Shown in pieces: positions 24,348 to 62,807 of a DNA stretch of 64,000 nucleotides. The position numbers and the translations under genes are program-made. The notes beneath the pieces were generated by a model. It saw only the letters and a list, made by a program, of their open reading frames with translations, had not been told where the DNA came from and made no database searches. Every line of letters starts with the position of its first letter. The first letter of the stretch is position 1. The DNA comes from Macrostomum lignano (Eukaryota): assembly GCA_002269645.1 (NCBI GenBank), contig NIVC01000040.1, forward strand, positions 868,001-932,000, in the 5' to 3' direction.

Positions 24348-24409
24348 TGCGTTGATTGATAAACTCATTAAAGTGGGGAAGTTTTGAAAACTGTGAATAA
24401 TAGGGCGGC

Positions 24410-24740
24410 ACTGTGGACAGTGGGGCGGAGATGATGGGGGCGGAAGACTGTGGATGGTGGGGGCGGAAGACCGGACGATGGGGGCGGCAGACTGTGGATG
24501 ATGGGGGCAGAAATCTGTGGATGAAGAGGGCGGAAGACTGTGGATGATGGGGGCGGAAGACCGGATGAAGGGGCGGAAGACCGGATGAAGGGGGCGGAAG
24601 ACCGGATGAAGGGGGCGGAAGACCGGATGAAGAGGCGGAAGTCTGTGGATGAAGGGGGCGGAAATCTGTAGATGAAGCGGGCGGAAGACCGAATGATGGG
24701 GCGGATGACTGTAGATGGTGGGGGGGGGGCGGAATACTGT
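24410..24740. repeat. Degenerate GGGGCGGAAGACCGGATGAA repeats immediately upstream of CTSC
   Basis: About 12 imperfect copies, each containing GC-box and ETS-like cores. Confidence 0.8.
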
Positions 24741-25427
24741 AAAGATTAAGTCAGAGCACAAGGCTTGCTGAAAAAAAGGAAAAAATTAAAAAATTAAACA
24801 TTCTTCAGAACCAAATAATCAGACCCGTTTGTTTTTATATTTTCGCGAGCTATAATAATTATATTGTTAGAAAAATAAATTTCAAACAGAACTTGTGGAA
24901 GTTTTAGTTAAAGTATAAAATAAACAAATAATAAGTCGATTGCTATGAGACAAACTACAGAAAAAAATTAGTAAGCATTAATAATAGCAAAATATTTGCT
25001 GGGGTCATTAAAATGCAATTAATTAATTACGAATGCAAATTATATTGACTGGGATATAATAAAATGCACAATAATAATATGCTACTTTGAAAATGCAAAT
25101 AAATTTAAATTCAGTAAAATTGAACAGAAAAAAGCACCATTTCAAACTACTGACTGATGAAAATAGTAGTATGTACTGTATAAGGAAATAGAAGTTAGAG
25201 ACAGGTGATTATGTACTATTAATTTTTCGCGAATACATGCAATATAGAGATAAGAGATGGACAGTGTGGCACAGAGAGTGACTGTGTAAACTGTAAATAA
25301 ATTCGCGCACTTGGTAAACATTGATTAGGATGTATAATAATTACGGAAATTAGGAATCATTATGGCTAGTTAATTAGTAAAAATAATTTGGGCAGTAAAT
25401 AAATGGTATGCAATTAAATTTGCGACC

Positions 25428-35300: not shown

Positions 35301-38300
35301 AAACGTAATTTTCGATACATATCGGCTATTTTGTATCCGTATGTTTTTTTACATCTCGTTGAAATAGCTAAAATACAATTTTTTTTTCTAAAAATATAAA
35401 ATCGCACCTGTTCTTTGTAAGCCCGCCTGGCGATAACCATTCTTGCTCGAGCCTGCATTTGAACAATAATAGACAAATAGCAATTGTAACGCGCTAGTCG
35501 CCTCTCCAGTTGTCGATCGCGTTGACAACGACGCCACCAACGCTGGATGGCCACAATCTGGTCTAAGCTGTTTGAGTACAGCTGTCGACGTTCTCGAAGA
35601 CGCCGTCGAACTAAGAAACCGCGCATAGCAGCTTGCAGGGTGATAATAAACGGTAAGCTAGTCTCGCGAATTCGACTCTTTCTAAACTCTTCGTTTTCCC
35701 GTCTGACAGCCTCTTCGGCTTCCTCGCGAGTTAGCAGCGGCGCCGGCGGGAGGGCCGGAGGTCGGTCGGACCAGACCAGGCGGCGCTGGGGCAACAGCAC
35801 ATAGAATGGCCGGGTTGGCCAGCGGACAACTAGCACGCTGGGCTGCAGCAGGTGCGACTGGAATGCGTTGATGGGAAGAACGAATTCAGTTAATGACAGC
35901 TGCTACTAGGCTTATAAAATCATTTAACTACATTGGACTTCAGGGACCGTTTTTTATAAACTCATTGATGTTAGCCTCAGGAACCGCTATCATAATGTGA
36001 CTGATACTTCAGGAACCGCTCCTAAAACACCCCACCGATACTTCAGGAACCGCTCCTACAACCGCACCGATACTTCAGGAACCGCTCCCACAACCCCACC
36101 GATACTTCAGGAACCGCTCCCACAACCCCACCGATACTTCAGGAACCGCTCCTACAACCCCACCGATACTTCAGGAACCGCTCCTACAACCGCACCGATA
36201 CTTCAGGAACCGCTCCCACAACCCCACCGATACTTCAGGAACCGCTCCTACAACCCCACCGATACTTCAGGAACCGCTCCTACAACCCCACCGATACTTC
36301 AGGAACCGCTCCTACAACCGCACCGATACTTCAGGAACCGCTCCTACAACCGCACCGATACTTCAGGAACCGCTCCTACAACCCCACCGATACTTCAGGA
36401 ACCGCTCCTACAACCCCTCACCGATACTTCAGGAACCGCTCCTAAAACCGCACCGATACTTCAGGAACCGCTCCTACAACCCCACCGATACTTCAGGAAC
36501 CGCTCCTACAACCCCACCGATACTTCAGGAACCGCTCCTACAACCCCACCGATACTTCAGGAACCGCTCCTACAACCGCACCGATACTTCAGGAACCGCT
36601 CCACAACCCCACCGATACTTCAGGAACCGCTCCTACAACCCCACCGATACTTCAGGAACCGCTCCTACAACCCCACCGATACTTCAGGAACCGCTCCTAC
36701 AACCGCACCGATACTTCAGGAACCGCTCCTACAACCCCACCGATACTTCAGGAACCGCTCCTACAACCGCACCGATACTTCAGGAACCGCTCCTACAACA
36801 CCTCACCGATGCTTCAGGAACCGCTCCTACAACCCCTCACCGTTACTTCAGGAACCGCTCCTACAACACCTCACCGATGCTTCAAGAACCGCTCCTACAA
36901 CCCCTCACCGATACTTCAGGAACCGCTCCTACAACCCCTCACCGATGCTTCAAGAACCGCTCCTACAACCCCTCACCGATACTTCAGGAACCGCTCCTAC
37001 AACCGCACCGATACTTCAAGAACCGCTCCTACAACCCCTCACCGATACTTCAGGAACCGCTCCTACAACCCCTCACCGATACTTCAGGAACCGCTCCCAC
37101 AACCCCAGCGATACTTCAGGAACCGCTCCTACAACCCCTCACCGTTACTTCAGGAACCGCTCCTACAACCCCTCACCGTTACTTCAGGAACCGCTCCTAC
37201 AACACCTCACCGATGCTTCAAGAACCGCTCCTACAACCCCTCACCGATACTTCAGGAACCGCTCCTACAACCCCTCACCGATACTTCAGGAACCGCTCCT
37301 ACAACCCCACCGATGCTTCAAGAACCGCTCCTACAACCCCTCACCGATACTTCAGGAACCGCTCCTACAACCCCACCGATGCTTCAAGAACCGCTCCTAC
37401 ACCACCTCACCGATACTTCAGGAACCGCTCCTACAACCCCTCACCGATAATTCAGGAACCGCTCCCACAACCCCAGCGATACTTCAGGAACCGCTCCTAC
37501 AACCCCTCACCGATACTTCAGGAACCGCTCCCACAACCCCAGCGATACTTCAGGAACCGCTCCTACAACACCTCACCGATACCTCAAGAACCGCTAATTA
37601 GAACGTTATGGAAACTACAGTGGCTGCTCCTATTCAACTTCATCAATAGTCACTAATCCGCTCACCCCATCAAGCCGGCCCGCAAAGCCCAATTCATCAG
37701 CTTTGAATCCTCGCAGCGACATCAGCCGATCTAGGTAAGTCCCAGCCAGAGCTTTCAACACTGGCACGCCCAACCGTAGCCTAGGATCGGCTAGCACGCT
37801 AACAACGCCGCTAGTGTCTATAATACTCGTATCGGCGTCTTGGTCGGCGCAGTCGGCTAGCGCCGCTTCCAGTCGCCACAGGCAGTCGACAAGATCGCGA
37901 GCCTCGCCTAGGAGACGGCCGGCCTCGCGTCGGCAGTCTTGCAGATCCTGCAGCCAGAGGTCGCGATCCAGTTGGACGCAGGCGCGATCGCGTAGCAGAG
38001 CTAAGCAGAGCTCGCTCAGCTCAGACTCGAGAGACTCAACCTGAAGTCCCGAGGCCAGCAGACCGGCAAGCCGAGACGCTTCGTCAACGGAGATTTCGTT
38101 GCCATCCGATTCGAATTCGATAGCAGCTCGAAGACGCGAGTTGAGCTCACGTATAGCGCGCAATTGACGCGCTTCGCGTTGTTCAGCATCTGCATTTGCG
38201 CGCTTCAGCTGCTGCTGCCGCTGCTGTTGCTGCTGCCGACGCGCCCGATTGACTTGGACAAGACAGTGGGCAATCTCGCGATGGGTCAACCAGCGACCGT

Positions 38301-41300
38301 TGTCATGGCAACCGTCATCGGCATTGGAGAAGCCGGTAGACTCGGCAATTAATTGTTGAGCATATTGGCTGATAGCTTCGGCCGATACTGAGTCGAAATT
38401 GAGCTCGGGCTCGCGCAGAGCTGCCAGCAGCCGCTCGGAGCCACCGTCACCATGGCGACAGTACCGACCGAGTGCATCGTTGACGGCGCCGACCTGCGAC
38501 ACAGGGAGAGAGAATCGAAAAGAGAACCGGCGTTATTTGGTGATGTTGCGAGGTTATAGACTGAAGAAAGTGAATGGAAGCTTGAAGACTGAAGAACGCA
38601 ATTAGATTGCCCGAGCCCGAAGCGCCCAAGGATCACCTGAGACATCTGATAAAAAACCTAAAGCCAAACCTGCAACTGAAAGCCTAAGCAACAAAATTTA
38701 TATTCTAAGATTAAAGAGAATAGCCTGGAAATTAAACGCATTTGCCTAATGATCAAACGTACGACTCGTATTTGTCTGTAGATCAAGGGGATTTGCCTAA
38801 TGATCAAACGGAATAGTCTGTAGGTCAAACGGATTAGCCTAATGATCAAACGGATTAGTCTGTAGATAAAATGGATTTGCCTAACTATCGAACAGTTTAG
38901 TCTAATGATCAAAACGGATTAGCCTAAAGATCAAACGGATTTGCCTAACTATCGAACAGTTTAGTCTAATGATCAAAACGGATTAGCCTAAAGATCAAAC
39001 GGATTAGCCTAAAGATCAAACGGATTAGCCTAACTATCAAACAGTTTAGTCTAATGATCAAACGGATTTGCCTAACTATCGAACAGTTTAGTCTAATGAT
39101 CAAACGGATTAGCCTAAAGATCAAACGGATTAGCCTAAGTATCGAACGGATTAGTCTAATGATCAAAACGGATTAGCTTAATGATTAAACGGATTAGCCT
39201 AATAATCAATTGAATTAGTCTAATGATCAATCGGATTAGCCTAAAAATCAAATAGATTAGCCTAAAGATTAAACGGATTAGCCTAAAGAAGATCGAACAG
39301 ATCAGACTAAAAACCCTAAACCCATGCATAAGCCAATAGAAACCATAGTCAGACAAGCAGAGAGAGGACTAGCTGACAAGATGCATTACACACATATACA
39401 TCCGCACACTATACACAAACCTTGTTAACAATAAACACGAGCAGCTCGAGCTCCTCTCTAGTAAGATCGGCCCCCTTCTCCAGCCGAGCGGAGCGCAATT
39501 CGCTTCTGTACACGCGTCTACCACGCGGATCCTCCGACCAGAGCAGCGTCGGCAAACCGGCGGATCGACGCGACAATAGCGACGCCGTTAAATTGTCGGC
39601 CTCAACAGCGGCGTCTGTATCAACATCGTCAGCGGAAGGATTCAATAGGGACGCGTTGATAGCGTCAATGGATTGGATAGTTTCGCGTTCGCGTTCCCAG
39701 CTGCGGTTGCCCTTGACAACGCAGCTAGTCAGAGCGGCCATGTCCAACGATTTGGGGGCCGCTGGCGAGGCAGGCGATCGAGGCGATTGGGGAGGCTTAC
39801 CGTGATGCTGACGCTGCCGCTTGAATGCCTGTCGTATTGGGAAGTATTGGATACGCTTGCATTATATATTTAAATCTGAAATTATCAGACGATCTAAAGA
39901 ACTAAAAAAGGGCAGCCTGAAGAATCGATGGGGAAGCCTAAAAATCGATGGGACAGCCTGAAGAATCGGTGGAACATCCTGGAACATCCTGAAGAATCGG
40001 TAGAATAGCCTGAAGAATCGGTGGGGCAGCCTGAAGAATCGGTGGAACAGCCTGAAGAATCGGTGGAACATCCAGAAGAATCGGTGGAACAGCCTGAAGA
40101 ATCGGTGGAACAGCCTGAAGAATCGGTGGAACAGCCTGAAGAATCGGTGGGACAGCCTGAAGAATCGGTGGGGCAGCCTGAAGAATCGGTGGAACAGCCT
40201 GAAGAATCGGTGGGACAGCCTGAAGAATCGGTGGGGCAGCCTGAAGAATCGGTGGGACAGCCTGAAGAATCGGTAACAGCCTGAAGAATCGGTGGAACAG
40301 CCCGAAGAATCGGTGGAACAGCCTGAAGAATCGGTGGGGCAGCCTGAAGAATCGGTGGGACAGCCTGAAGAATCGGTGGGGCAGCCTGAAGAATCGGTGG
40401 AACAGCCTGAAGAATCGGTGGGGCAGCCTGAAGAATCGGTGGGGCAGCCTGAAGAATCGGTGGGGCAGCCTGAAGAATCGGTGGGACAGCCTGAAGAATC
40501 GGTAACAGCCTGAAGAATCGGTGGAACAGCCCGAAGAATCGGTGGAACAGCCTGAAGAATCGGTGGGGCAGCCTGAAGAATCGGTGGGACAGCCTGAAGA
40601 ATCGGTGGGGCAGCCTGAAGAATCGGTAACAGCCTGAAGAATCGGTGGGACAGCCTGAAGAATCGGTGGGACAGCCTGAAGAATCGGTGGGACAGCCTGA
40701 AGAATCGGTGGGGCAGCCTGAAGAATCGGTAACAGCCTGAAGAATCGGTGGAACAGCCTGAAGAATCGGTGGGGCAGCCTGAAGAATCGGTGGGACAGCC
40801 TGAAGAATCGGTGGGACAGCCTGAAGAATCGGTGGGGCAGCCTGAAGAATCGGTAGAACAGCCTGAAGAATCGGTGGGACAGCCTGAAGAATCGGTGGAA
40901 CAGCCTGAAGAATCGGTGGGGCAGCCTGAAGAATCGGTGGGGCAGCCTGAAGAATCGGTGGGACAGCCTGAAGAATCGGTGGGGCAGCCTGAAGAATCGG
41001 TGGGGCAGCCTGAAGAATCGGTGGAACAGCCCGAAGAATCGGTGGAACAGCCTGAAGAATCGGTGGGGCAGCCTGAAGAATCGGTGGGACAGCCTGAAGA
41101 ATCGGTGGGGCAGCCTGAAGAATCGGTGGAACAGCCTGAAGAATCGGTGGGGCAGCCTGAAGAATCGGTGGGACAGCCTGAAGAATCGGTGGGGCAGCCT
41201 GAAGAATCGGTGGAACAGCCTGAAGAATCGGTGGGACAGCCTGAAGAATCGGTGGGACAGCCTGAAGAATCGGTGGGGCAGCCTGAAGAATCGGTAACAG

Positions 41301-43007
41301 CCTGAAGAATCGGTGGAACAGCCTGAAGAATCGGTGGAACAGCCTGAAGAATCGGTGGGGCAGCCCGAAGAATCAGAGAGACAAAGAATTAATAATAAAA
41401 AGCACTGACCAGCAGAGCAGACAGGTAGTGCTGTGCGCCCTCAGCTCGCACGGGCAGTGCCGGGCACTGGGTAACCAACAGGTGTAACAGTCGGTCCGCC
41501 TGGCCTCGCTGAACGGCCTCTTCGATGGCTTTGAAGTCGACCTGGGAGACGTTGCTATCCGATGGCATGTTCTCTTTGTTCTCTTCACCAAGGATGTCAT
41601 CGCCAATGCTGCGGAATTTGCTCATCTGGAGCAGCGGGTTTTATTGGAGAACGTTTATAAGGTTTATAAGGAGAAGCTCATACAAAATTATTGAGTCATA
41701 TAAGCATTGCCATTGAGTCATAACGCAATCATTGAGGTAGAGTCATACAGCAATGATTGAGGTTGAGTCATACAGCAATCATTGAGGTTGAGTCATACAG
41801 CAATCATTGAGCTTGAGTCATACAGCAATCATTGAGGTTGAGTCATACAGCAGTAATTTTTTGGTAGGGTCATACAGTATTCACTGAGTCATACAGAAAT
41901 CATGGTCATTGGGTCATACAGCATCTATTGAGTCACACAGCATCCATTGAGTCACACAAAAATCATGGTCATTGGGTCATACAGCATCTATTGAGTCACA
42001 CAAAAATCATGGTCATTGGGTCATACAGCATCTATTGAGTCACACAAAAATCATGGTCATTGGGTCATACAGCATCTATTGAGTCACACAAAAATCATGG
42101 TCATTGGGTCATACAGCATCTATTGAGTCACACGAAAATCATGGTCATTGGGTCATACAGCATCCATTGAGTCACACAAAAATCATGGTCATTGGGTCAT
42201 ACAGCATCCATTGAGTCACACAAAAATCATGGTCATTGGGTCATACAGCATCCATTGAGTCACACAAAAATCATGGTCATTGGGTCATACAGCATCTATC
42301 GAGTCATACAGAAACCATGGTAATTCGGTCATAACTCAATCATTGGCTTGCTGTCACTGGGTCAAACAGCAATAATTACAAACTATTATAACCCTCACCT
42401 GATCCGCATTGATACTCTTAGTCACGGCGCTCAACTCAGCCTCAGTAAAGGTGACTTTCCCATACAGATCTTCAATTCGAGCTGCTCGACCGCTTCTAAA
42501 CAGAAAAGCGCCCAAAGCGTGCAAGCAATAAACCAGCTTAGGCATATTTCTTCCATCGTAAATATCCGTAGTCTCAGGCCAATAATTCCTTGGCAATCCA
42601 ATATGCTGCAGAGCCTTTAGAAAATGATTAATATTATCGGTATGCCGGAAGTCCAGTCCTCTAGCTAGAAACCGGTCCTGACGCGGATCGAATATAGATT
42701 TTATAGGCACTAGGCGAGGCGCGAACGCGTTAGCCAGCTTAGCTAATGCTACGCCATTCTGCAGACAGGCTTCCAGCTGTTCGCCAGCTGGCGGCAGGCT
42801 CTCCCTGATGCAGGCCTCTAGCCAGACTCGGGCCTCCTCTAGCCGGCACAGATACTGATAAGCCAGCTGAGATCGGCGCCGTTCGTCCATCTCTTCGGCT
42901 GATAGGCGAACGCCTGCGGAAGACAGTTCGTTAGCTAACTGGGCGGTGGCATTAGCATTAGCCGTGGCCATTGCCTGAGTAGCAGCCGATGCTTTTGGCG
43001 TGTCCAT
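26352..43007 (-). CDS. IQGAP: IQ motif-containing GTPase-activating-like protein, complete, 1671 aa
   Basis: 12 GT-AG exons with consistent phases: 43007-42399, 41625-41410, 39828-39421, 38493-37666, 35857-35408, 34982-34576, 33904-33601, 31629-31480, 30983-30753, 30076-29732, 28702-28041, 26757-26352 (5016 nt). CH domain (LAYQYLCRLEEARVWLEAC..FRHTDNIN), IQGAP repeats, degenerate WW, IQ motifs (LQAAMRGFLVRR, IQAWWRGCRVR), GRD (LLQTQPVYL), and RasGAP_C/RGCT ending VNVNLLLHLINKKFYTK. Confidence 0.95.
26868..28035. repeat. (GAGT/GAAT)n microsatellite, IQGAP intron 11
   Basis: Read directly; contains repeated ~130-bp interrupted blocks. Confidence 0.95.
28765..29712. repeat. 22-bp minisatellite, IQGAP intron 10
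   Basis: Unit CTACCTGTCAGCTGTGAACAGA. Confidence 0.95.
30170..30690. repeat. Degenerate ~23-bp repeat, IQGAP intron 9
   Basis: GAGTGAGACAGGGGTGAGATTAA-like units. Confidence 0.8.
31020..31455. repeat. 25-bp minisatellite, IQGAP intron 8
   Basis: Unit GGGGAGGGTAAATGGCGATTCTCAT. Confidence 0.9.
31655..33570. repeat. 42-bp minisatellite, IQGAP intron 7, about 45 copies
   Basis: Unit GTAAGTAGCTGATTATTAAGTGAATATTCTAGCTACACTACT. Confidence 0.95.
34138..34204 (-). mobile_element. tRNA-derived SINE head in IQGAP intron 6
   Basis: A box TAGCCTAGTGG (34195-34185) and B box GGTTCGATTCC (34159-34149). The anticodon arm is missing, so it is not a tRNA gene. Confidence 0.6.
34205..34555. repeat. 38-bp minisatellite with a CACGTG E-box in each unit, IQGAP intron 6
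   Basis: CACGTG at 34244, 34282, 34320, 34358, 34396, 34434, 34472, 34511 and 34548. Confidence 0.95.
35010..35335. repeat. Degenerate ~150-bp tandem duplication, IQGAP intron 5
   Basis: TTTCGATACATATCGGCTA-like motif near 35015, 35167 and 35310; AAAAATCTATCRTACTACT near 35072 and 35221. Confidence 0.6.
35975..37590. repeat. 32/34-bp minisatellite, IQGAP intron 4
   Basis: Unit CCGATACTTCAGGAACCGCTCCTACAACCCC(TC)A. Confidence 0.95.
38730..39300. repeat. Degenerate 21/22-bp repeat, IQGAP intron 3
   Basis: GATTAGCCTAATGATCAAACG-like units. Confidence 0.9.
39905..41370. repeat. 21-bp minisatellite, IQGAP intron 2
   Basis: Unit CAGCCTGAAGAATCGGTGGRR, about 68 copies. Confidence 0.95.
41700..42330. 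repeat. 25-bp and 44-bp related minisatellites, IQGAP intron 1
   Basis: GAGTCATACAGCAATCATTGAGGTT followed by TCATGGTCATTGGGTCATACAGCATCTATTGAGTCACACAAAAA. Confidence 0.9.
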
Positions 43008-43860: not shown

Positions 43861-45359
43861 ATTTAAACCAACATGCAAGTCAACAACAACAAAGTCTATA
43901 TTAGATATTTGAAATAATGACTATTAAAATCTTGTTACAACATTGGCTGATTTAGTTTGAATGATCTTTCAAAGATAGCACATAGTAAAAAAATTAATTC
44001 TATATAATAAAAAGTATTTTTAAAAAGGTATTTAATTTATTAGTTGATAATACTTTATTCTTGATTTAAAATATGCAGCTATCTAATAGCTTTGTATCTA
44101 AAAAAGGCTTTAAAGTTGAAGAATAATAATCCTGTTTTTATTGGGGGTCTAGAAAAAAATTATTAAGCTTAGGCCTTAGATGAATTAGAAAGCTTGGTAA
44201 TGCAATAAAAAATAGACAAATAGCCTGACAATATCAATCTAGCTTGGTGAAAAACAAAAAGCAATCTAACACTTTAATGATTAGGGCCTATTGGCAAACA
44301 AATTGGATTTCATTTCAAGATGGTATATATGAAAAAGATAGAAAAATTCCTTTGTTATTTTGTTTTTCTAGAAAAACCTAAAAGAAACAAGGTCTACTAT
44401 TTTTCAAATATTATATAGTAGGCCTAGGCCCTAGGGCTAGGCCTATATCTCACATTGTATATTATCATTTTATAAAGATTTAATCTTTCAACATAATAAT
44501 TAAGCTTTGTATATTCCTATGTCAATCTAATTTTCTGAATCATTAATGCCAATAATAGAATTTAATATTACTTGAATAATAGTAACCATTTTGTAATAGT
44601 AATAGCCACTTTTAATAATAACCAATGGCAATAGGTATCTGAAAAAACTAGCTTAGGCCTAGCCTTAGGTAGGCTTAAAATGAAAATGGAGATTGCAAAA
44701 AAATATTCTAGTTATTTTTCCACAGCCAATGTTTTTTATAGTATGCTAAATATAATTTAATATATTGTAATATTTAATAAATAAATAAAATAGCTTTTGA
44801 AAAGGAGCCATAGCCCATAGTTTGGAAGATGACATTTATAGATCTATATATGGCAGCCATTATTTGCATGGTACCATGTAAATATTGATATTTAAAATAT
44901 TATTTTTTATACAGTAACTAGAAATATACTTTATAAATAGTTATCTTATCAAAGACTGCTAAATATTTGTTGCTATATCTCTTATTTTCATAATGATTTT
45001 AAACTAACTAAAGTGAGTAGATAGAATTTAGGTGTGATTTATATATGTTTATAGCCTAGCATTTTTTATTAGCTTATAGTATTAGTACTATAATTAATAC
45101 AGAGTATTGAAGGATGTTTCAAAATAAACAAATGAGAATATGACATTTGCCTTCAAAAAGATATTTGTGGTCAAATGTAACTGGAAAATAACTATAAGTA
45201 CTATACAATAGATAAAAGATAATAAAACTAGTCTTTATTTTTGTTACTGTGTAAATAACAATATTCCTAAAGGGTCCTAAAGTGTCCTAAAGGGTTAAAA
45301 GTTGGACCAAAAGTAAATTTCGTGTTAATTTCGGTCCAAAATCGAACCAATAGCTTGCA

Positions 45360-45745: not shown

Positions 45746-47214
45746 TGCTATTTATATGGTAATGTGCAAATAATGATTTGCCTATATCTATACACCAAGA
45801 CAAACCAAGCATTTAGTAAGGCCAAGGGTAGGCCTACTTGCCATTTTAGCATATATATGAGGTCTTATACTTTTTTATCTCACCAGACCTAGCATATGCT
45901 AATACATGATCCAAATCCAAACTATAGAAAGGGAGCAATGTGTTTTAATAGCTTGGGAGATATCCAAAAATGCTAAAATCAGCTTTTTAGATAGAGAAGT
46001 ATGAAAACAATATCTAGTAAAATGTAGAATCTGTAGCAGAAACAGAAAAGAATAGCACAACAACATGCATAATCCACAGTAGAATGGTAAATTGCAGAAT
46101 CAACTGCAAAATCTACTAGCTTGAAATAAAATACAAATAGCAAATATAATATAGGAATCAAAATTTATCATTTTAAAGCTTTAAAGCTTTAGAGCATTTT
46201 AAAGCTATGTCTATAGCAGTGTAACCATATGAAAAGATATATAGACCTAAGAAATTTTAGTATGATTCTATATAAGACAAACTGAACTAGAAATAGCAAT
46301 ATCTATTAGGCCTAGGTCTACTCAAAATAGTAAATATAGGTTCTCTTGTGAATAATAATAATATGGCTAATACTGAAGTGTTAAATTTTAAAGGCTTTAT
46401 AGTTATAAGATGTGGAAAATGTGGAATTGGAATGGAATAGCTCAGTAAAAAGCATAATCTATAGCAAAATGGTAAAATGCAGAATGAACTATGGATTCCA
46501 CTAACTTAAAGTAAAATGCGAATGCAGGGTAGCTAAAGTGCAGTATGAATTAGGCCTATATATATAATCTTAGGCAATGCTTATCCCTAAGGTACCATAG
46601 GAATAATTTCTGTCTTATTCCAATGGTACTATGGGATTAATTTTCTGCTTATCCACATAGCACACTGATGACTTGCTGCTCTTTTCTTCTATATATATGC
46701 CTCACAGAATAATTTAGTTTGTAATTTCTGTAATTTCTGTCTTATTCCAATGGTACTATGGGATTAATTTTCTGCTTATCCACATAGCACACTGATGACT
46801 TGCTGCTCCTTTCTTCTATATATATGCCTCACAGAATAATTTAGTTTGTAATTTCTGTCTTATTCCAATGGTACTATGGGATTAATTTTCTGCTTATCCA
46901 CATAGCACACTGATGAGTTGCTGCTCCTATCTTCTATACATAGGTTCTTGGACACTTTGTCATCTAACCACTTCATCATCTTGATGACGAAGTGACCATG
47001 GTTTTTGGGTGCTTTGTCATCTCAAATTTTTTTAGTAAATCTAGATGACGAAGTGACTAAATTTTGAGGACACTTTGTCATCCCAAGATTTAGCAATGCT
47101 ATTGCTATAAATTGATATTTGATTGTTATTGTTATAAATTGTTACTCAATCAATTTAGTCTATAAAATATAGGATTAAATATGAGGGGCATTCAATAAGT
47201 TTCTGGACCATAAG

Positions 47215-48171
47215 TAGGGATTCCAATCCCGGGATCCCGGGATCCCGGGATCCCGGGATCCCGGGATCCCGGGATTGGGGCCAAAAATCTGGGATTTGAA
47301 TCCCGGGATTTTTTTGGGAATCGAATCCCGGGATTTTTAATCCCGGGATTGCAAAAGACCGGGATCGGGATCCCGGGATTTCAAGGCCTTAATCCCGGGA
47401 TTGGTCCGGGATTAGAACGACCTTTCAATGCCTAAATTAGATAATTTAAAGTCTAAACGTTTATTTGAATAATAAAACATTTATTTGTTTTTGCTGTTTC
47501 TCAATGAAACGTTAAACATTTGCAAAGCTCCTGTCCTAATTGAGCTAAAAATTGTTAATGTGAACTGTAAATTATAGATAATTTTAACTTTTTTTTCGTT
47601 TTCTACCACGAGACGAGACTGAGGGCCTTTTCATATTGCTTGCTCTGGTTCCAGAACAAGAACCAATTTGTGAAGTATAAACTTTTTGTCTCCATAACTA
47701 GAGGGAGATACGTGCTATAAAGTTTTTATAATTGAATGACAGTCGCCAAGAAGAAAGTGAAAAATTGTGCTAAGTGAGGCTGTTAAGGCAGTCAAATATT
47801 AACAGAGTTTAATAGTTATACTGCTGTTTTTCTTGGAATTCCGAACCGATTCTGGTTCTGGAATTGGTAATATGAAAAGGCCCTGAGACTCTGAGAGTCG
47901 CGAGACCATGACTACTGCACGCGGCACGCCGCACAGTCCGTCTAGCAATTTAGGGATTCCAATCCCGGGATCCCGGGATCCCGGGATTGGGGCCAAAAAT
48001 CCGGGATTTGAATCCCGGGATTTTTTTGGGAATCGAATCCCGGGATTTTTAATCCCGGGATTGCAAAAGCACCGGGATTCCGGGATTTTGAATCCCGGGA
48101 TTTCAACAGCATCGGGATTTCGGGACTATTCAATCCCGGGATTGTAAAATGTCGGGATTTTGGAATCCCTA
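47215..48171. mobile_element. Young non-autonomous hAT element inserted at the edge of the mariner left TIR
   Basis: TIR TAGGGATTCC / GGAATCCCTA. Perfect 8-bp TSD ACCATAAG (47207-14, 48172-79). ATCCCGGG subterminal arrays. Confidence 0.92.
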
Positions 48172-48330
48172 ACCATAAGAGCCAGCGCACTCTAGGCTGC
48201 TCAAAATGTACTCACATGAAAAATGTACATCTCCTGAGATTTGACATAAAATATAAAGGGTACACAACAAACCTGAATCTCACAACTTCACTTCAAATTC
48301 ACCTATCACCTCCAACTTCAAGTATCTATT

Positions 48331-49391
48331 ATAGAACTATCATGCATCCACTGGAGAGTGATGATTTTTTACAATTACAAATGTGGTCTGAACCAGTCCC
48401 AAAGCTTAGAACAGCTTTGCCTAGCCTTTGGAGATACTGCACCCTTGAGAACAACCATCTTTGACTAGTTTGCGGAATTTTGTCGGGGCCAAGTGTTGCT
48501 CAAAGATGAGGCTCGCGAAGGATGACCCCCCGAGTTTGACCATTCAAGAAGCAGTGGCTGCAGTGCAGGCCCTGGTTGAGGAAGACCTGCAATTGATAGT
48601 GCAACAGCTAGCCACTGCTGTGGGCATTTCATTGGGAAGCACCTCAACCATCCTACATGAAAGGCTTGGCCTCAGCAAGGTGTCCGCATGCTAGATGCCT
48701 CATCACCTGACCCAAGAGCAAAAACAGGCCCGGATCGATTGGTGCCATTTAATGCTCAAAACATTCGACGATGGAAGATCAACAAGCTCCTAGGACATCG
48801 TCAGTGGTGATGAAACCTAGGTGTACTGTTTTGACCCGGAGAGCAAGTAGCAGTCGGCCCAGTGGACCCCCATTGGCAGCCCGCCACCTTCAAAGCTGGT
48901 GCCGTCGCGAAGCGTCGCCAAGTAGATGGTGGCTGTTTTTGTGGCTTGCAGTGGTCCCATAGCCATGATTCCGCTGGCAACACAGCGGATAGTGACTGCA
49001 GGCTATTATGTAACCGACTGTATGCCCCAGGTGCTGCAATCCATCACTGAAAAGCACCCAAGGACTCGCCATTGCGGGTTGCTACTCCATTAGGACAATA
49101 CCCTGGCTCACACTGCAACTAACTGTAGAGTTCATGGAGCAGAATCGCGTCCAACTGCTTCAGCACCCACCCTACAGCCCCAACTTGGCACCATGTGACT
49201 TCTTTGTGTTCCCACAATTCAAGCGCCTGCTTAAGGGAGTCCAATTTGCATTGCCAGAACAGGCTGTCGAGGCCTTCCAAAGTCACCTATTTGACATCCC
49301 TCAGTCAGAGTGGGCTGGCTGCTTTGCTACTTGGTTTGAAAGGATGAGAAAGTGCAATGAAGCTGCTAGAGAATACTTCAAAAAGGCCTGA
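48331..49391 (+). pseudogene. Mariner transposase pseudogene
   Basis: WRVMIFYNY..AFGDTAP; *MPHHL (WVPHxL); IVSGDET*; LH*DNT.AH; HPPYSPNLAPCDF. Start ATG mutated to ATA, 8 in-frame stops, 2 frameshifts. Confidence 0.92.
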
Positions 49392-49679
49392 CATTTATCT
49401 TCCCTCTGACGCTTTTCATTTCTGTGCATCCAGAAACTTATTGAACACCCCTCATACACACTTAGAGATTCAACTTGTCGCTATAATTGGCATTCAATGT
49501 ACATAATATATATGTAGTTTGTATATGCATGCTTCAATGTACAAGTACATAAATGTAGATACTAATACTCATTTTAATTTTACTCTATGTTTAACCTTGC
49601 CAAGCTCTAATAATTATGTTTGCTTCCTTGCTAAAGCCTAAAATTGGCATTATCACTTCTATAACCCAGGGGAGGCAAC

Positions 49680-51654: not shown

Positions 51655-53017
51655 TAACAAAGTGTCTAGGGAGTAGATGATAAAGTGTCTACATTAGTAT
51701 TATGGATAACAAAGCGGTAAAATGACAGTGTCCAATAATAAGAGTGGATATGAAGTGGTTAGATGACAAAGTATCTAGGAACCTTATATATATACCTCAC
51801 AGAATAATTTAGTTTATTACTTATGATTTGAGTACAGTAGGCCTAGGCCTATAACAAAATAACTTTGTTTGATATTTTGTATTTATAGGCTTTTTATTTT
51901 GACGAACTTTTAGGAGCTTTAAAATCTTAGGAGAAGAAGGATTTATAGGAGCAACTATCTTGTCAGTGTGCCATGCAGATAAGTAGAAAATTATTCCCAT
52001 GGCATATGAAGAAGATAGGAGCAGCTGTTTTGTCAGTGTGCCATGCAGATAAGCAGAAAATTATTCCCTTATTTGATCTGCATAATACTATTGGAATAAG
52101 ACAAAAATTATTCCTATGGTACTGTAGGGATAAGCACAGCCTAAGATTATATATCTTTAGGGTATCTATGCAAAATTCAATATCAATTTCTAGGTTTTTC
52201 CAGGTTAAAATAAGTAAAGCTCCAGGTTGCTACCTGGTGGAGCTTTATAAAATGAAACATATGTATGCAGTAATGCAGCAATGTTTCTTGATTTAGTGTT
52301 TCCTACTATAAACTATATATTATATATTTCATAGATTATTTAGATTAGGCCCTATTTATTTCTTGTATTATACTAACTGAAGAACAAAATTAAAAGTATA
52401 AAATAAAAGACTTTTGCTATAAATATACTACTTAATAATAATATAACGATACAGGAGAGATTGTATTTGTAACATACTGACATGGTAGGCCTAGCAACAT
52501 TTTTTAATACCAAAGTTTCTATCACATCATATAGCATTATGGCATCCTATATACTAAAAATGAGTTGTCTGTGGGTATGCGATAGATTTCAGAAAAATTG
52601 GCTCAACCGATTTTCTTCAAACTTGCACCATTCATTCAGAAATTTTCCTGGCACGGTACATGCATCTTGGCTAAGAAATTGCTAAATGCTAAAGGGATTA
52701 AATATTCGAAAAACATGCTTTTTTGCAAAGGTCAAGCAAAATTTTCGACTTAAAATGCATTTTAAGAATGCTAGAGAAAAAACTGACTGGCTGAATTCTG
52801 ATTGTGGTAATGATTGCATCACAACAAGTTCAAAACAGTGCCGAAGAAATGCACACAAGACTTGATTGTAATTGTGTAACCATATTGCTAACTTGAATTG
52901 AGACTGATACTGGCTGACTGAGAAATTGATTATGTCATAACTTTTTACTCTAACCGATTTGCTATAAGAATTTAATTATAAGGGCCACAATTCATGTACT
53001 CCAATTGACAAGAGATA

Positions 53018-56993: not shown

Positions 56994-57079
56994 CTGTCGC
57001 CCTTTTGACTGTCGCCCTTTTGACTGTCGCCCTTTTAACTGTCGCACTTTTTATCTGTCGCCCTTTTGATCGGCTGCCC
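56994..57079. mobile_element. Solo MITE terminus with CTGTCGCCCTTTT repeats
   Basis: 5 subterminal repeats ending in GATCGGCTGCCC; the partner end was not found. Confidence 0.5.
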
Positions 57080-57617
57080 TAGGCCCCTAGCCTAGGCTTT
57101 TATATTAGAATTTTATTTTACTTCAGGTCTTGAAGTTGAGGCGACTAATCAAGCCTTCACAGAATCACAAAAAATCCTAACTTGAACAAAATTCGAGCGT
57201 GATCAGCGTGATCGAGCGTCACGTTTTGACTATTCGATTTAAAATCAATAATCTGAATGTTTTGAAATTCTGCGCTTTTGTTGTTAAAGCTTAGACTTCT
57301 AAAGACCTTTTTATTTAAGACTATGCACTTTGTGAGTCTTATATTTTTTACTGAAGCTTGACTGTATTTTGACAGAATTTGACAGAATTTTTTCAGACAT
57401 TTTGTTACTTCTGACATTTTTTCAAACTGTAAAAACCAGCGCCAAGCATTGAATAAAATTAAGCTGACTGACGCTCATCTGACAGTGAGTAATGGTGGGC
57501 CTTCCTTGTCTCCTCACCGATCTATTTTAAGAATGGAGTTAGGCCTATTCTGTATTCTGCTTGGCTGTTGTGTTACAATTACATTGTTTTAATTCTGCTG
57601 TTCAGGTTGTGTCAAAA

Positions 57618-57990: not shown

Positions 57991-60119
57991 TGTCAAAACT
58001 ATCAATGTCGTTTTGACTCGTTTCTTTGCATTTCTTTGCATTTTTGGATTTCATAGTTTTAGGCCTAACTGCGAAGCCAAAAACTTTAACATTTTTACTT
58101 TTACTTAAGAAAAAATTGATTTGGAAATGGAAATTGGTCAAACATCAGATAAGCCTAGGGTCTATTAAAAACAATGTTTTTTAATTCTTTCAATGGGCCA
58201 TTGATTGTTAAATATTGAATTTTAAAGGCTTAATACAATAATATGTTAGGTCTAGGTCTACTATTGTACTAAGGTCTAGCCTAGTCTAACTTCTAAATTT
58301 GTTTCTTTTAAGTTTTTGTCATTAAATTTTGTGTACCTACCTTTTTATATAATATCTTTTTATTGCGATTGTGTTATTGTTAGTAATTAGTTAGTAGGAG
58401 GGGCCTAGCCTAGGCTAAAAAAATAAAGTAAAAAATTTTAACTTTTGATTTTTTATTCTACGCCCCTATCTAAAAGTAAAAATCATCTTTGATTTTAATT
58501 AAAAATCTATTTGGATCTATTTCTATTTAGCATAGGCCCTGGTTTAAAAAAAATTGCTGATTACAAGCCTAGGCCCTAAAATTATAAAATGTGATTTGCA
58601 AATAAATTTTGTCTTGTCTTTTTGTATGCTAATAGAATGGTGAACTAATCTTAAACTATTTGAATTTTTTTTTAATTTTGAATTTAGGAAGTCTTTTATC
58701 TTTGCTAAACCTATTATAACATTTTGAAATTAATAGTTGCTATTGAAGAAAAAGGTTTCTAAAATGGAAAATTTTTTATAGACACCTTTTTATTTGTTGC
58801 TATAATATATTAAATTGTCATAGTTTTATTGATAAAACAATTATATTATAAGCCTAATCAAATATAAAAACAGAATTCAAAATAAATCAAATGATAGTAT
58901 TTTAAAATATAATAATTAATCCACATATTTTGACATTAATTAAATGTTTTCTAAATAAGATTCTTAAGGACATTAAAAAGTATATAAAGTATACTAAATT
59001 AATTTTTGCTTACATATTATTCACTATTACTAGAGCCATTTCTATATGGCGAAATCCAAAAACGTGGGATAAAACGGTAAAACAAATCTGTGGACATTCG
59101 ATAGAAAGTAATGTATCTAAAAAAGGTTTTTGAAAGATAGATAGGTCTTTAGAAAATAGTTCTGGATAAAAACTATTGTTTTCATGTTTTATATTATTGA
59201 ATAAATAAGAAAAAACCACAAAAAAAGCATTTTGAAAGTCCAAGTTGACCGATTAGCAATTTTTTGTTTCACTTTTTTTCATTATTAAACAATTAATTTT
59301 AAGACTTGTTGGCCTTAGAGAAGGCTAATTTTTTTACTACTTACAAAACAGAAAGTAATCTGTGTTTTACTTTTTATTCTATTCAAATAATAAGAAAAGA
59401 AACTAAGAAAAGAAACTAAAAAGAAACCATTTTTGCTCCACCTATTATTTTAATTATCATAATTACAAATTTATCTAAGCAAAAAGTCTAAATATTAATA
59501 TCATAGGGCTTCTTATATTCTTATGATACATACATGCGCAACTTCTGAAATTACGCTGGCTGTGTGACTTAGTTTTTGATAAAAAATGCAACTTACCTAT
59601 GAAAGAACCAAGCAAAAACTTTAGGTAAACGGCAAGAGTAACTATGAGCATATTTTTAAAGCTAAATGCCTCGCCAGCTAATTAGTGCTGCGTGCAGATT
59701 CCACGTTTTTATAACAGCTAATCAGTATGTCATCTAGTGGCGGCATGAAGCAATTAGTAAATTGTCAGTACAGTGTAGTGAGCACACTACAAAAGTCATG
59801 ATTCATGTTCATGAATGTCCAGAAGTAAGTGAAGTGAATACAGTGTGACCTATAGCTCAAGAACGATTTGCTAGACGATTCGGCATTGAAGATGAGAGCC
59901 CTGATTCAGATGGCTCATCAGATGCGAAATACGAATCCAGTAGAGATACAAGCTGTGAAAACCCACAGATTTTTAAACCACTGAATTCTAATTCCCGGAA
60001 CTATTTTTGCATAGATTCTAAATTTGAAGTCATGCTCAAACAAAAACTTGTTAACAGTTAGGAAAAAGGCAAAGATGGGAGTAATGCATATTAAACTAAG
60101 ATTTGAGGCCTTTGCAAAT

Positions 60120-61039: not shown

Positions 61040-61775
61040 TTGTGACTTACTTCCCTCTTATTGCGACTTAGTTGCTTCTTTTTGCGACTTACCTAATCCT
61101 TTTGCAACTTACCTAACCCTTTTGCGACTTACCTAATCCTTTTTGCGACTTAATCCTTTTTGCGACTTACCTAATCCTTTTTGCAACTTACCTAATCCTT
61201 TTTGCGACTTACCTAACCCTTTTGCGACTTACCTAACCCTTTTGCGACTTACCTAACCCTTTTGCAACTTACCTAATCCTTTTGCGACTTAGCTGATCCT
61301 TTTGCGACTTACCTGATTCTTTTTGCGACTTACCTGATCCTTTTGCGACTTACCTGATTCTTTTTGCGACTTACCTAATCCTTTTTGCAACTTACCTAAT
61401 CCTTTTTGCGACTTACCTAACCCTTTTGCGACTTACCTAACCCTTTTGCAACTTACCTAATCCTTTTGCGACTTATCTGATCCTTTTGCGACTTACCTGA
61501 TTCTTTTTGCGACTTACCTGATCCTTTTTGGGACTTACCTAATCCTTTTTGCGACTTACCTAATCCTTTTTGCAACTTACCTAATCCTTTTTGGGACTTA
61601 CCTAATCCTTTTTGTGACTTACCTGATTATTTTTACAACTTAGTTTGCTTCTTTTGCGAATTGTTTTTCTTTTGCTTCACCATTTTCCCTGAACTGCTCT
61701 TTCTTTCACTTTCCTCTTGCCTTTCTTGGTTCTTGTGTTTTTCTGTTTTTGGTTGACTCAATTTTGCGACTTACC
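61040..61775. repeat. 21/22-bp array (TTTTGCGACTTACCTAATCC)
   Basis: Read directly; lies within the 59533-61834 element. Confidence 0.9.
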
Positions 61776-62807
61776 CCTGGTCAGCCACGATTTACGGTGG
61801 CCAGATTGGCCAGGTCGGCCAGCAGTTGCGCATGTATGTTATGATATCTTATTGCTTAGTCACCAAAATTGTTGTAGGGGTTATTTCTATCCCTAATATA
61901 ATCTTTACAAACTGCTACCAAGTTGTAACAGGGGTTAATTCTATCCTGTTGTTACCAAATTTTGTACTAGGCCTAGGGTTATTTCTTACTACTTGATTTT
62001 ATTGGTTATTTCCTATACTTGTATATTTACTGATAGCATATGTACTTTTATTGGTAGCATATATACTTTTAGCCTGAGCAGTCTAATGGCACTATATTTC
62101 TAATTCTATATATCCCCCAGTTTTCTCCTCTAAGAGGGTTTCTCTCAGTCCAGGCATTACTGGGATCAGAGGGTCATAGCTTTTTTGCTGGGTATTCTAC
62201 CCTAGGCCTAAGGTAGGTTTCTTAGACTCTAAGTCTAGATCTCTCTATTACCCTGTGGTAGGATTTCTGCCTTTTAAAGGCAAATTCTCCTGTTCTGAAT
62301 CTGGATGTCTTGTTCTTTGAAAATAATTTGAATTCTCCCAGTCTTGGGGTTTCTAGTGCTTCTAAATAACTAAGTCAAAAAGTATTGATCAAGCTTCAAT
62401 TCAAGATACTAAAATAGACTATAAACCCAAAGCAAGTGGCAAGTTGTTTCTTCTCTTGCTAACAGCTCGTGTATTTATATTCCTTTTCAGTAAGTTTTAA
62501 AACAAATAAAATTTTGTAATATTTATAATATTTACAATATTTTTGATATTATACTCATTAAAACAAAATAGCCTAATTTCAAATGCAATACTTTCTAGGA
62601 TAATAACAAAGCCTATTTCATTAAGAAGACAAAAGTATTCTTAGAATTTTTTTGTGCACAAAAGCAAAATTTTGGCATAATCTGGTTAAAGCCAAAGATT
62701 CAAATTATCCAATGTGCCAATTATATTAGTAAAGGCAATCTGAACTTGGGTTTTTATTGCACCTATGCTTTTATTGCTTATATATAGGATTGTTGTATAC
62801 ATGCATA

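What the first reader, a model, noticed from the sequence alone, without database searches (positions are those of the whole stretch)
48331..49391. C>T mutagenesis focused on CAG/CTG (CWG) context: possible CHG-type methylation or RIP-like repeat defence in an animal
Seen: 7 of the 8 premature stops in the dead mariner are TAG (48466, 48692, 48791, 48818, 48848, 48923, 49091); the eighth is TGA from CGA (CpG); none is TAA. Three TAGs replace conserved Gln (CAG>TAG). Four sit where Trp is expected (48791 less certain), and each of those is preceded by C, so CTGG>CTAG is again CAG>TAG on the other strand. No Trp went to TGA, and many CpGs survive in the same ORF. The same change recurs as satellite variants (CCCAGC>CCTAGC and TCTGGC>TCTAGC in the 36-bp array, TTCAGCC>TTTAGCC in the 30-bp, CTCAGAA>CTTAGAA in the 29-bp, CCTGTC>CCTATC in the 22-bp). 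It also appears in the MULE-like TIR (inferred CCTGG>CTTGG at one end, CCTAG at the other) and in the tRNA-like T stem. Decayed DNA at 43.5-46.5 kb and 57-63 kb is visibly rich in CTAG/CCTAGG. Established: 5mC deamination leaves C>T in the methylated context; CHG methylation of repeats is a plant hallmark and CpA RIP a fungal one. Inference: an unusual non-CpG cytosine-modifying system may act on this genome. The sample is small, ancestral codons are inferred from family motifs, and Gln-to-stop changes are CpA by necessity.
Basis: partly seen in the sequence, partly recalled or inferred. Interest (0 to 1): 0.8.

Follow-up and report, generated by a model that had tools for sequence, protein, structure and literature searches.

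The report
CWG-focused C-to-T decay in flatworm mariner
A dead mariner transposon in what is almost certainly the flatworm Macrostomum lignano has lost cytosines at CAG/CTG sites nearly as often as at CpG sites, which hints at non-CpG cytosine methylation of a transposon in an animal, but the evidence is one 1-kb element and nothing else in the window repeats it.

Summary
The core observation holds. The mariner fossil has seven TAG stops and one TGA at the stated positions.

I tested every site that four relatives conserve. C>T in this copy is 16/45 at CG, 14/52 at CWG (CCAG 7/10), 0/11 at CCG and 7/165 at CHH. CWG against other non-CG gives p = 7e-6, and p = 0.01 once the seven TAG events are removed. 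The same method on a related mariner family from other genomes gives a CpG-only signal (CG 13.6%, CWG 2.6%, CHH 2.7%).

The supporting claims fail:
- Satellite variants show no CWG excess. They show no CpG excess either, so they are uninformative.
- The CCTAGG richness comes from a dispersed TAGGCCTAGG motif.
- CpG-depleted DNA around the element is not depleted in CWG.

A neighbouring exon is 98% identical to a Macrostomum lignano protein. Reviews say this flatworm keeps DNMT1 and DNMT3.

Best reading (about 0.45): 5mC deamination at CG plus CAG/CTG on a targeted transposon copy. This is a lead that can be tested on public data, not a demonstrated system.

The parts
48203..49463 (+). Mariner-type transposon fossil. 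It is 76% identical in DNA to an intact-looking relative (L001) over 1,265 bp. No 5' inverted repeat was found.
   Evidence: blastn against L001. Pfam Transposase_1, HTH_48 and DDE_3 on the repaired translation. Mos1 and SETMAR matches in the PDB. TIR comparison.
48331..49391 (+). Remnant of the transposase reading frame. The start codon is ATG>ATA at 48331-48333. There are eight premature stops and two frame breaks.
   Evidence: Three-frame translation and codon alignment with L001, L007, L008 and L009.
48466..48468 (+). TAG from TGG (Trp), in GAC|TGG. This is CTGG>CTAG, which reads CCAG>CTAG on the other strand.
48523..48525 (+). TGA from CGA (Arg of the GRP motif). This is a CpG transition.
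48526..48532 (+). One-base insertion in or next to a run of six C. It shifts the frame.
   Evidence: Sequence. The frame is restored by dropping one base.
48692..48694 (+). TAG from TGG (Trp of ARW-VPH), in TGC|TGG.
48791..48793 (+). TAG from TGG (Trp in 11 of 16 homologues, including the closest), in TCC|TGG. The ancestral pentamer was CCTGG.
48818..48820 (+). TAG from TGG (Trp of DETW), in ACC|TGG. The ancestral pentamer was CCTGG.
48848..48850 (+). TAG from CAG (Gln of KQQS).
48923..48925 (+). TAG from CAG (Gln of AKQM).
49004..49006 (+). TAT from TGG (Trp), in GGC|TGG. The middle G>A is a fifth CTGG>CTAG-type hit, followed by a G>T.
49090..49093 (+). Adjacent CC>TT: CAC|CAG became CAT|TAG. 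The TAG derives from the Gln of HQDN, and the ancestral pentamer was CCAGG.
49121..49121 (+). Second frame break. One orphan base sits where the relatives have a codon.
48597..48597 (+). C>T, Thr>Ile. The context is CAG judged by this copy's own flanks. It could instead be CpG, because the closest relative has ACG here. Counted as ambiguous.
48721..48721 (+). G>A, a synonymous CAG>CAA change. CTG context on the other strand.
48990..48990 (+). C>T, ACA|G>ATA|G (Thr>Ile). CAG context.
49079..49079 (+). C>T, CTG>TTG. CTG context.
49154..49154 (+). G>A, CAG>CAA. CTG context on the other strand.
49368..49368 (+). G>A, GCT|GGN>GCT|AGA (Gly>Arg). Another CTGG>CTAG change.
49429..49458 (+). 3' terminal inverted repeat. 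All three of its CpGs have changed to TpG/CpA relative to both TIRs of the relative L001.

Best explanation
WHAT IS SHOWN. The element is a dead, 5'-truncated mariner copy. Its decay is dominated by C>T transitions (37 C>T against 4 T>C at conserved sites). The transitions concentrate in two sequence contexts, CpG and CWG. Within CWG they are mainly CAG, and above all CCAG/CTGG. CCG and all other non-CpG contexts are spared. The excess of TAG stops is a by-product. CAG (Gln) and C|TGG (Trp after a C) are the codons in which a CWG transition makes a stop, and both give TAG.

WHAT IS INFERRED. The most likely cause is deamination of 5-methylcytosine in the germline or stem-cell lineage of the host, with this transposon copy methylated at CAG/CTG as well as at CpG. 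The host is Macrostomum lignano or a very close relative. That flatworm is reported to retain DNMT1 and DNMT3. The leading candidate is therefore persistent de novo DNMT3-type methylation aimed at the transposon, with a CAG flank preference like that of mammalian DNMT3B.

This would also explain why neighbouring DNA is CpG-depleted but not CWG-depleted: its methylation could be merely maintained rather than renewed de novo.

The methylation itself, the enzyme and the targeting are inferred, not shown.
For: - At the 499 sites where L001 and at least two of L007, L008 and L009 all agree, C>T in this copy is CG 16/45, CWG 14/52 (CAG 11/31, CTG 3/21, CCAG 7/10), CCG 0/11 and CHH 7/165. Fisher for CWG against other non-CG gives p = 7e-6. 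Leaving out the seven TAG events that prompted the idea gives 7/45 against 7/176, p = 0.010.
- The effect holds separately at codon position 1 (5/24 against 3/74) and position 2 (7/19 against 1/57).
- Trp codons make a clean internal test. Five of 6 C-preceded TGG are hit at the middle G. None of 4 others is hit, and none of 10 is hit at the third G.
- Method control: seven copies of a related mariner family from other genomes give CG 26/191, CWG 11/426 and CHH 42/1533. With L001, L007 or L009 as the target, CWG is 0/35, 0/44 and 2/46.
- The specificity lies in the 3' bases, as it does for methyltransferases. A 5' C alone has no effect (2/49), CCAH is 1/18 and TC is 1/43.
- Host identity: the IQGAP exon is 98% identical to UniRef100_A0A1I8JPU1 of M. 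lignano. Reviews state that DNMT1 and DNMT3 are conserved there, with low 5mC (PMC11292947; PMC9246332).
- DNMT3B prefers CAG among non-CpG sites (PMC5595995).
Against: - The evidence is one element and 14 events, of which one (48597) may really be a CpG event. The hypothesis was also formed on part of the same data.
- Nothing in the window replicates it. The satellites show no CWG effect, and no other transposon coding remnant is present in 43-64 kb.
- CpG-depleted non-coding DNA around the element is not depleted in CAG+CTG: 368 observed against 338 expected from dinucleotide shuffles.
- The CWG rate is nearly as high as the CpG rate. Known animal non-CpG methylation is far weaker than CpG methylation (PMC9246332).
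- The preferred 5' base here is C, which is not what I recall for mammalian mCAG (own knowledge).
- Less strictly polarised third-codon positions show no CWG excess (6/33 against 16/92). The CpG signal is also weak there (6/21), so those sites are noisy.
- Methylation was not measured.
Confidence: 0.45

Rival explanations
1. CpG-only methylation plus chance. The copy decays by ordinary CpG deamination and background transitions. The clustering of the remaining C>T changes at CWG is a small-sample accident, made visible because CWG transitions are the ones that create TAG stops.
For: - There are only 14 CWG events, and the pattern was noticed first and tested afterwards.
- The hold-out test is modest: p = 0.010, or about 0.03 by my rough estimate (not run) if the ambiguous site 48597 is dropped.
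- There is no effect in the satellites.
- Neighbouring CpG-depleted DNA is not depleted in CWG.
- There is no excess at relaxed third-codon sites.
Against:
- The effect is seen separately at codon positions 1 and 2.
- The Trp comparison (5/6 against 0/4 against 0/10) does not depend on any outgroup inference.
- The control family and three relatives show no such pattern under the same procedure.
Confidence: 0.25
2. A dedicated CWG- or CCWGG-type cytosine methyltransferase, either a chromomethylase-like enzyme or a bacterial Dcm-like enzyme gained by horizontal transfer, methylates transposons in this flatworm. Deamination then follows.
For: - CWG is hit and CCG is spared (14/52 against 0/11). 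Plant chromomethylase-dependent CHG methylation shows the same bias (PMC5221884).
- The strength is close to that of CpG.
- Inner cytosines of CCWGG are hit 3 times out of 4, and CCAG 7 times out of 10.
- There is a precedent for a bacterial cytosine methyltransferase adopted by an animal: N4CMT of bdelloid rotifers (PMC10406627, listed; also mentioned in PMC11292947).
Against: - Eleven of the 14 events lie outside CCWGG, so a strict Dcm-type site does not account for them.
- CAG is hit more than CTG (11/31 against 3/21). A strand-symmetric CWG enzyme should hit both equally, although the difference is not significant.
- No such gene is known in animals, and none could be searched for here.
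- CWG is not depleted in adjacent old DNA.
Confidence: 0.1
3. Direct enzymatic or repeat-induced deamination without methylation. An AID/APOBEC-like DNA deaminase, or a RIP-like process triggered by repeated copies, edited the element.
For: - The bias is strong: 37 C>T against 4 T>C.
- The effect is confined to a multi-copy type of element and is absent from unique neighbouring DNA.
- There is an adjacent CC>TT at 49090-49091.
- The 5' base matters: CCAG 7/10 against other CWG 7/42, and TCG 11/17 against other CpG 5/28.
Against: - Known deaminases are defined by their 5' neighbours. Here a 5' C or T alone has no effect: CC outside CWG 2/49, CCAH 1/18, TC 1/43.
- Fungal RIP targets CpA generally. 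Here CAA is 0/14, CAC 0/20 and CAT 2/19.
- C>T and G>A are interleaved along the element (14 against 23) rather than lying in long single-strand runs.
- The element is still 47% G+C.
Confidence: 0.1

Closest known systems
Non-CpG methylation by DNMT3B at CAG in mammalian pluripotent cells (PMC5595995)
   Same: It occurs in an animal. It is CpA-directed with a G at +2, so CAG is preferred over CAC, CAA and CAT. It accompanies CpG methylation and depends on continuing de novo activity. A DNMT3 is reported for the host species.
   Different: Here the mutational footprint is almost as strong as at CpG. The preferred 5' base is C. CTG is also somewhat raised. The host is a flatworm and the target is a transposon. 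No mutational footprint of mCAG of this size is known to me in mammals (own knowledge).
Plant CHG methylation by chromomethylases (CMT3 with H3K9 methylation), which is biased against CCG (PMC5221884)
   Same: It targets transposons, CAG/CTG is favoured over CCG, and it coexists with CG methylation.
   Different: Animals have no known chromomethylase. Symmetry between CAG and CTG is not evident here. No CWG depletion is seen in adjacent old repeats.
Fungal repeat-induced point mutation (RIP)
   Same: C>T hypermutation of a repeated mobile element produces many stop codons.
   Different: RIP acts on CpA, or on other dinucleotides, irrespective of the +2 base, and it drives sequences AT-rich. 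Here only CAG, not CAH, is hit, and G+C stays at 47%.
Dcm-type CCWGG methylation, including the old and disputed reports of CCWGG methylation in mammalian DNA (own knowledge)
   Same: The inner C of CCWGG is hit at 3 of 4 conserved sites. The hottest 4-mer, CCAG, is part of that motif.
   Different: Most events are outside full CCWGG sites.
CpG methylation-driven decay of transposons in animals
   Same: It is fully present in this copy (16/45 conserved CpG cytosines, and all three CpGs of the 3' TIR) and in the control family.
   Different: It does not explain the 14 CWG events.

Membership tests
Tc1/mariner DNA transposon | Transposase with an N-terminal HTH and a DDE/D catalytic domain of the mariner type | tested here: met
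   Pfam HTH_48, Transposase_1 and DDE_3. Mos1 and SETMAR matches. 76% amino-acid identity to P0001.
Tc1/mariner DNA transposon | Terminal inverted repeats at both ends | tested here: not met
   The 3' TIR is present at 49429-49458 and matches the relative's TIR. No 5' TIR was found, and the alignment to the relative stops at 48203 next to a CCCGGGAT-rich repeat block. This is consistent with a 5'-truncated copy.
Plant-type CHG (chromomethylase) methylation | CAG/CTG favoured over CCG | tested here: met
   As a mutational proxy, C>T is 14/52 at CWG and 0/11 at CCG.
Plant-type CHG (chromomethylase) methylation | Strand-symmetric methylation, so CAG and CTG cytosines are hit equally | tested here: inconclusive
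   CAG 11/31 against CTG 3/21. The numbers are too small to decide.
Plant-type CHG (chromomethylase) methylation | A chromodomain-containing DNA methyltransferase in the genome, and 5mC measured at CHG | not testable with these tools
DNMT3B-type non-CpG methylation | CpA preference with G at +2 (CAG above CAC, CAA and CAT) | tested here: met
   CAG 11/31 against CAC 0/20, CAA 0/14 and CAT 2/19.
DNMT3B-type non-CpG methylation | Level far below that of CpG methylation | tested here: not met
   The mutational proxy gives 27% at CWG against 36% at CG.
DNMT3B-type non-CpG methylation | A DNMT3 enzyme present in the host | not tested
   Stated for M. lignano in two reviews (PMC11292947; PMC9246332). 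Not verified here.
Fungal RIP | C>T at a dinucleotide (typically CpA) regardless of the next base | tested here: not met
   CAH contexts are 2/53 against CAG 11/31.
Dcm-type CCWGG methylation | Events confined to the inner C of CCWGG | tested here: not met
   Three of 4 conserved CCWGG inner cytosines are hit, but 11 of the 14 CWG events lie outside CCWGG.
AID/APOBEC-type DNA editing | Hotspot defined by the 5' neighbours (TC, CC, WRC) | tested here: not met
   CC outside CWG 2/49, CCAH 1/18, TC 1/43.

The most novel reading that the evidence does not exclude
Macrostomum lignano, an animal, methylates transposons at CAG/CTG (strongest at CCAG/CTGG) about as heavily as at CpG in the lineage that gives rise to gametes. 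That would amount to a CHG-like silencing mark outside plants, and it would leave a second class of hypermutable cytosines in animal repeats.
Probability: 0.25. Interest if true: 0.85.

Novelty: new variant of a known kind. Interest (0 to 1): 0.6.

Why it matters
Cytosine methylation in animals is regarded as essentially a CpG phenomenon. The exceptions are weak and limited to certain cell types. [quoted passage not shown]

A transposon-specific CWG footprint as strong as the CpG footprint would have several consequences:
- It would point to a non-CpG silencing mark in an animal whose germline is renewed from adult pluripotent stem cells.
- It would bear on how the flank preferences of DNMT3 enzymes evolved.
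- It would matter for dating and reconstructing repeats in this genome, because CpG-only corrections would be wrong.

The idea can be tested immediately on the published genome assemblies and on a base-resolution methylome of the species.

Tried and rejected
FAILED OR EMPTY SEARCHES
- Three protein searches timed out, and one of them counted against the cap.
- The exact-protein look-up of the CH-domain ORF found nothing.
- The metagenome scan for close mariner copies returned only relatives at 57% identity or less, so I could not build a same-family consensus from the host genome.
- The window holds only one mariner copy and only seven short dispersed repeat pairs. That is too few for a second spectrum.
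- A look at all stop-free stretches of at least 50 aa in 43-64 kb showed no other transposon coding remnant.
- Rfam and tRNA scans found nothing.
- The primary M. lignano genome paper (Wasik et al. 2015) is not in the library. What it reports on bisulfite data is known to me only through reviews.
- Four literature searches found no described CWG-type methylation or hypermutation in animals.

ANALYSES SET ASIDE
- My first polarisation, by parsimony over all sites, gave only p = 0.058. I replaced it because it counts unchanged variable sites in the denominator while dropping changed ones.
- A first context assignment used the relative's flanking bases and misfiled two likely CpG events (49104, 49182) as CWG. 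I redid it with the copy's own flanks.

REJECTED READINGS
- A reassigned TAG codon: TAG replaces both Trp and Gln.
- Selection for stops: none can act after the first stop.
- Codon usage alone: the copy still has 13 CAG and 12 CAA Gln codons, and no CAA became TAA.

Full report
WHAT IS THERE

Positions 48203-49463 hold one copy of a mariner-type transposon.
- The repaired translation matches Pfam HTH_48, Transposase_1 and DDE_3. It also matches the Mos1 and SETMAR transposase domains in the PDB.
- Its closest relative in the protein collection is 76% identical (P0001). The DNA of that relative (L001) aligns over 1,265 bp at 76% identity.
- The copy is dead. Its start codon is ATA. It has seven TAG and one TGA, a one-base insertion at a run of six C (48526-48532), and a second frame break at 49121.
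- The 3' inverted repeat is present at 49429-49458 with all three of its CpGs mutated. No 5' repeat was found.
- It is the only mariner copy in the window.

CHECKING THE OBSERVATION

Mos1 and SETMAR alone leave two of the TAGs ambiguous. An alignment with 16 closer homologues and a codon alignment with the DNA of four relatives settle them. The ancestral codons were TGG, CGA, TGG, TGG, TGG, CAG, CAG and CAG.

The Trp codons give a clean pattern.
- The four Trp>TAG codons all follow a C.
- A fifth C-preceded Trp (49004-49006) is TGG>TAT and carries the same middle G>A.
- One C-preceded Trp (48352) is intact.
- The four Trp codons that follow T or G are intact.
- No Trp was hit at its third G.

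Under context-free mutation models, TAG should make up 43-51% of new stops in this frame. Seven TAG out of eight stops therefore has P = 0.014-0.04.

A TEST THAT DOES NOT DEPEND ON STOPS

I took every alignment column at which L001 and at least two of L007, L008 and L009 carry the same base. That gave 499 sites. I then asked where the window's copy differs.
- The copy has 37 C>T against 4 T>C.
- I took each flanking base from the conserved state where it is known, and otherwise from the copy itself. C>T is then 16/45 at CG, 14/52 at CWG (CAG 11/31, CTG 3/21), 0/11 at CCG and 7/165 at CHH.
- CWG against all other non-CG contexts gives p = 7e-6.
- Removing the seven TAG events that generated the hypothesis leaves 7/45 against 7/176, p = 0.010.
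- The excess is present at codon position 1 (5/24 against 3/74) and at position 2 (7/19 against 1/57).
- Within CWG the hottest 4-mer is CCAG (7/10, against 7/42 for the rest, p = 0.002).
- A 5' C outside CWG has no effect (2/49). CCAH is 1/18 and TC is 1/43.
- One CWG event (48597) may be a CpG event. Two events that first looked like CWG (49104, 49182) are better read as CpG and are counted as CpG.

CONTROLS

- The same procedure with L001, L007 or L009 as the target gives CWG 0/35, 0/44 and 2/46.
- Seven copies of a related mariner family from other assemblies (L002-L004, L010-L013) give the classical picture: CG 26/191 (13.6%), CWG 11/426 (2.6%) and CHH 42/1533 (2.7%).
- Neither the method nor mariner sequence as such therefore produces a CWG signal.
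- An outgroup-free comparison with L001 points the same way for positions 1 and 2. Sites where L001 has C and this copy has T are 15/86 at CWG, against 2/67 for the reverse. At third positions there is no asymmetry (7/44 against 6/34).
- Relaxed polarisation at third positions shows CWG 6/33, CHH 16/92 and CG only 6/21. Those sites are too saturated to be informative.

WHAT DOES NOT SUPPORT THE WIDER CLAIM

- I aligned 24 satellite arrays to their consensus, which gave 866 substitutions. C>T per copy-site is 2.8% at CWG, 3.2% at CHH and 1.7% at CG. Per distinct site it is 26%, 34% and 21%.
- The arrays lack even a CpG effect, so they neither support nor refute the idea. They behave as unmethylated or rapidly homogenised DNA.
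- CCTAGG is enriched against dinucleotide shuffles. The sites belong to a dispersed 10-mer, TAGGCCTAGG, with 20 hits at up to one mismatch against 3.6 expected.
- The non-satellite DNA around the element has CpG o/e 0.29-0.58. Yet CAG+CTG is 368 observed against 338 expected. A long-standing, region-wide CWG hypermutability comparable to CpG is therefore excluded for this DNA.
- Whatever acted on the mariner was specific to it, or to elements like it.

HOST

- The minus strand carries an IQGAP-type gene, with CH, IQ and RasGAP_C domains. Its introns are filled with minisatellites. Its CH exon is 55-61% identical to IQGAPs of vertebrates, molluscs, echinoderms, cnidarians and insects.
- A less conserved exon (37630-38502) is 98% identical to UniRef100_A0A1I8JPU1 of Macrostomum lignano.
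- Reviews state that this free-living flatworm keeps DNMT1 and DNMT3 and has low 5mC, and that genome-wide patterns were unknown in 2022 (PMC11292947; PMC9246332; PMC10658182).
- I could not read the primary genome paper.

INTERPRETATION

It is shown that this copy has two classes of hypermutable cytosine, CG and CWG, and that the TAG excess follows from the second class. The rest is inferred.
- The cause is probably 5mC deamination.
- The specificity sits in the +1 and +2 bases, as it does for methyltransferases, and not in the 5' bases, as it does for AID/APOBEC enzymes.
- CCG is spared.
- Only CAG is hit among CpA contexts, which argues against RIP.

Among known systems, two resemble the pattern. 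One is the CAG preference of DNMT3B in mammalian pluripotent cells (PMC5595995). The other is plant chromomethylase-dependent CHG methylation with its bias against CCG (PMC5221884). Because a DNMT3 is reported for the host, I favour persistent de novo methylation of the transposon with a CAG flank preference.

Three things do not fit that picture well:
- the near-CpG strength of the effect;
- the 5' C preference;
- the absence of any replicate.

Chance, aided by post hoc pattern finding, keeps about a quarter of the probability.

VERDICT

The supporting examples from satellites and CTAG-rich DNA should be dropped. The decisive work is spectra from all copies in the M. lignano assembly and base-resolution methylation at CAG/CTG on transposons. 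It is straightforward but cannot be done with these tools.

Noticed in passing
window 44419-44445, 44652-44663, 46307-46320, 51838-51851, 52486-52495, 57078-57097, 58150-58159, 58247-58256, 58405-58415, 61966-61977, 62201-62212: A G+C-rich, partly palindromic 10-mer, TAGGCCTAGG, and close variants recur in AT-rich DNA: 20 hits at up to one mismatch against 3.6 expected. They often form small inverted clusters. This looks like the end or core of a dispersed short repeat family, and it accounts for the CCTAGG richness.
   Followed up: partly
window 28037-43007, minus strand: An IQGAP-type gene has large exons: CH domain 42354-43007, 37630-38502, IQ motifs 35192-35836 and 34572-34964, and RasGAP_C 28037-28645. 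Its introns are almost entirely filled with minisatellite arrays of 21-46 bp units. One exon is 98% identical to a Macrostomum lignano protein.
   Followed up: partly
window 23928-24761, minus strand: This ORF carries a cathepsin C exclusion domain (Pfam PF08773, E = 1.6e-14). It runs straight out of the 21-22 bp GGGGTAAGGGGGTAGAGGCAT array.
   Followed up: partly
24 satellite arrays, e.g. 9704-11540 (unit CACTCATTTTAGCGCCGCAGG): CpG sites in the arrays are no more variable than other sites. For example, there are 0 changes in about 337 copy-sites at the four CpG cytosines of the 21-bp array. The mariner has lost 36% of its conserved CpG cytosines. The exception is the array at 61057-61642, in CpG-poor DNA, where the CpG is hit in 8 of 48 copy-sites. 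This suggests a mosaic of methylated and unmethylated DNA within the window.
   Followed up: partly
window 48413-49380 (the CpG events in the mariner): CpG decay is strongly biased by the 5' base: TCG 11/17 against ACG, CCG and GCG together 5/28. Several events lie in TCGA.
   Followed up: no
window 47217-47400 and 47950-48170: Two blocks rich in the octamer ATCCCGGG and its inverted copies are 92% identical over about 140 bp. The second block abuts the point where the mariner loses similarity to its relative, so it may have replaced the 5' inverted repeat.
   Followed up: no
L001 1449-1451 (relative from JGI metagenome 3300038379): The only premature stop in the closest relative is also TGG>TAG, but it follows a G (GAG|TAG), so it is not in a CWG context.
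   Followed up: no
window 12708-14168, minus strand: A 486-aa ORF very rich in Gln and His has no Pfam match. It overlaps CTG/CAG-type triplet repeats at 12884-12965 and 13848-13943.
   Followed up: no
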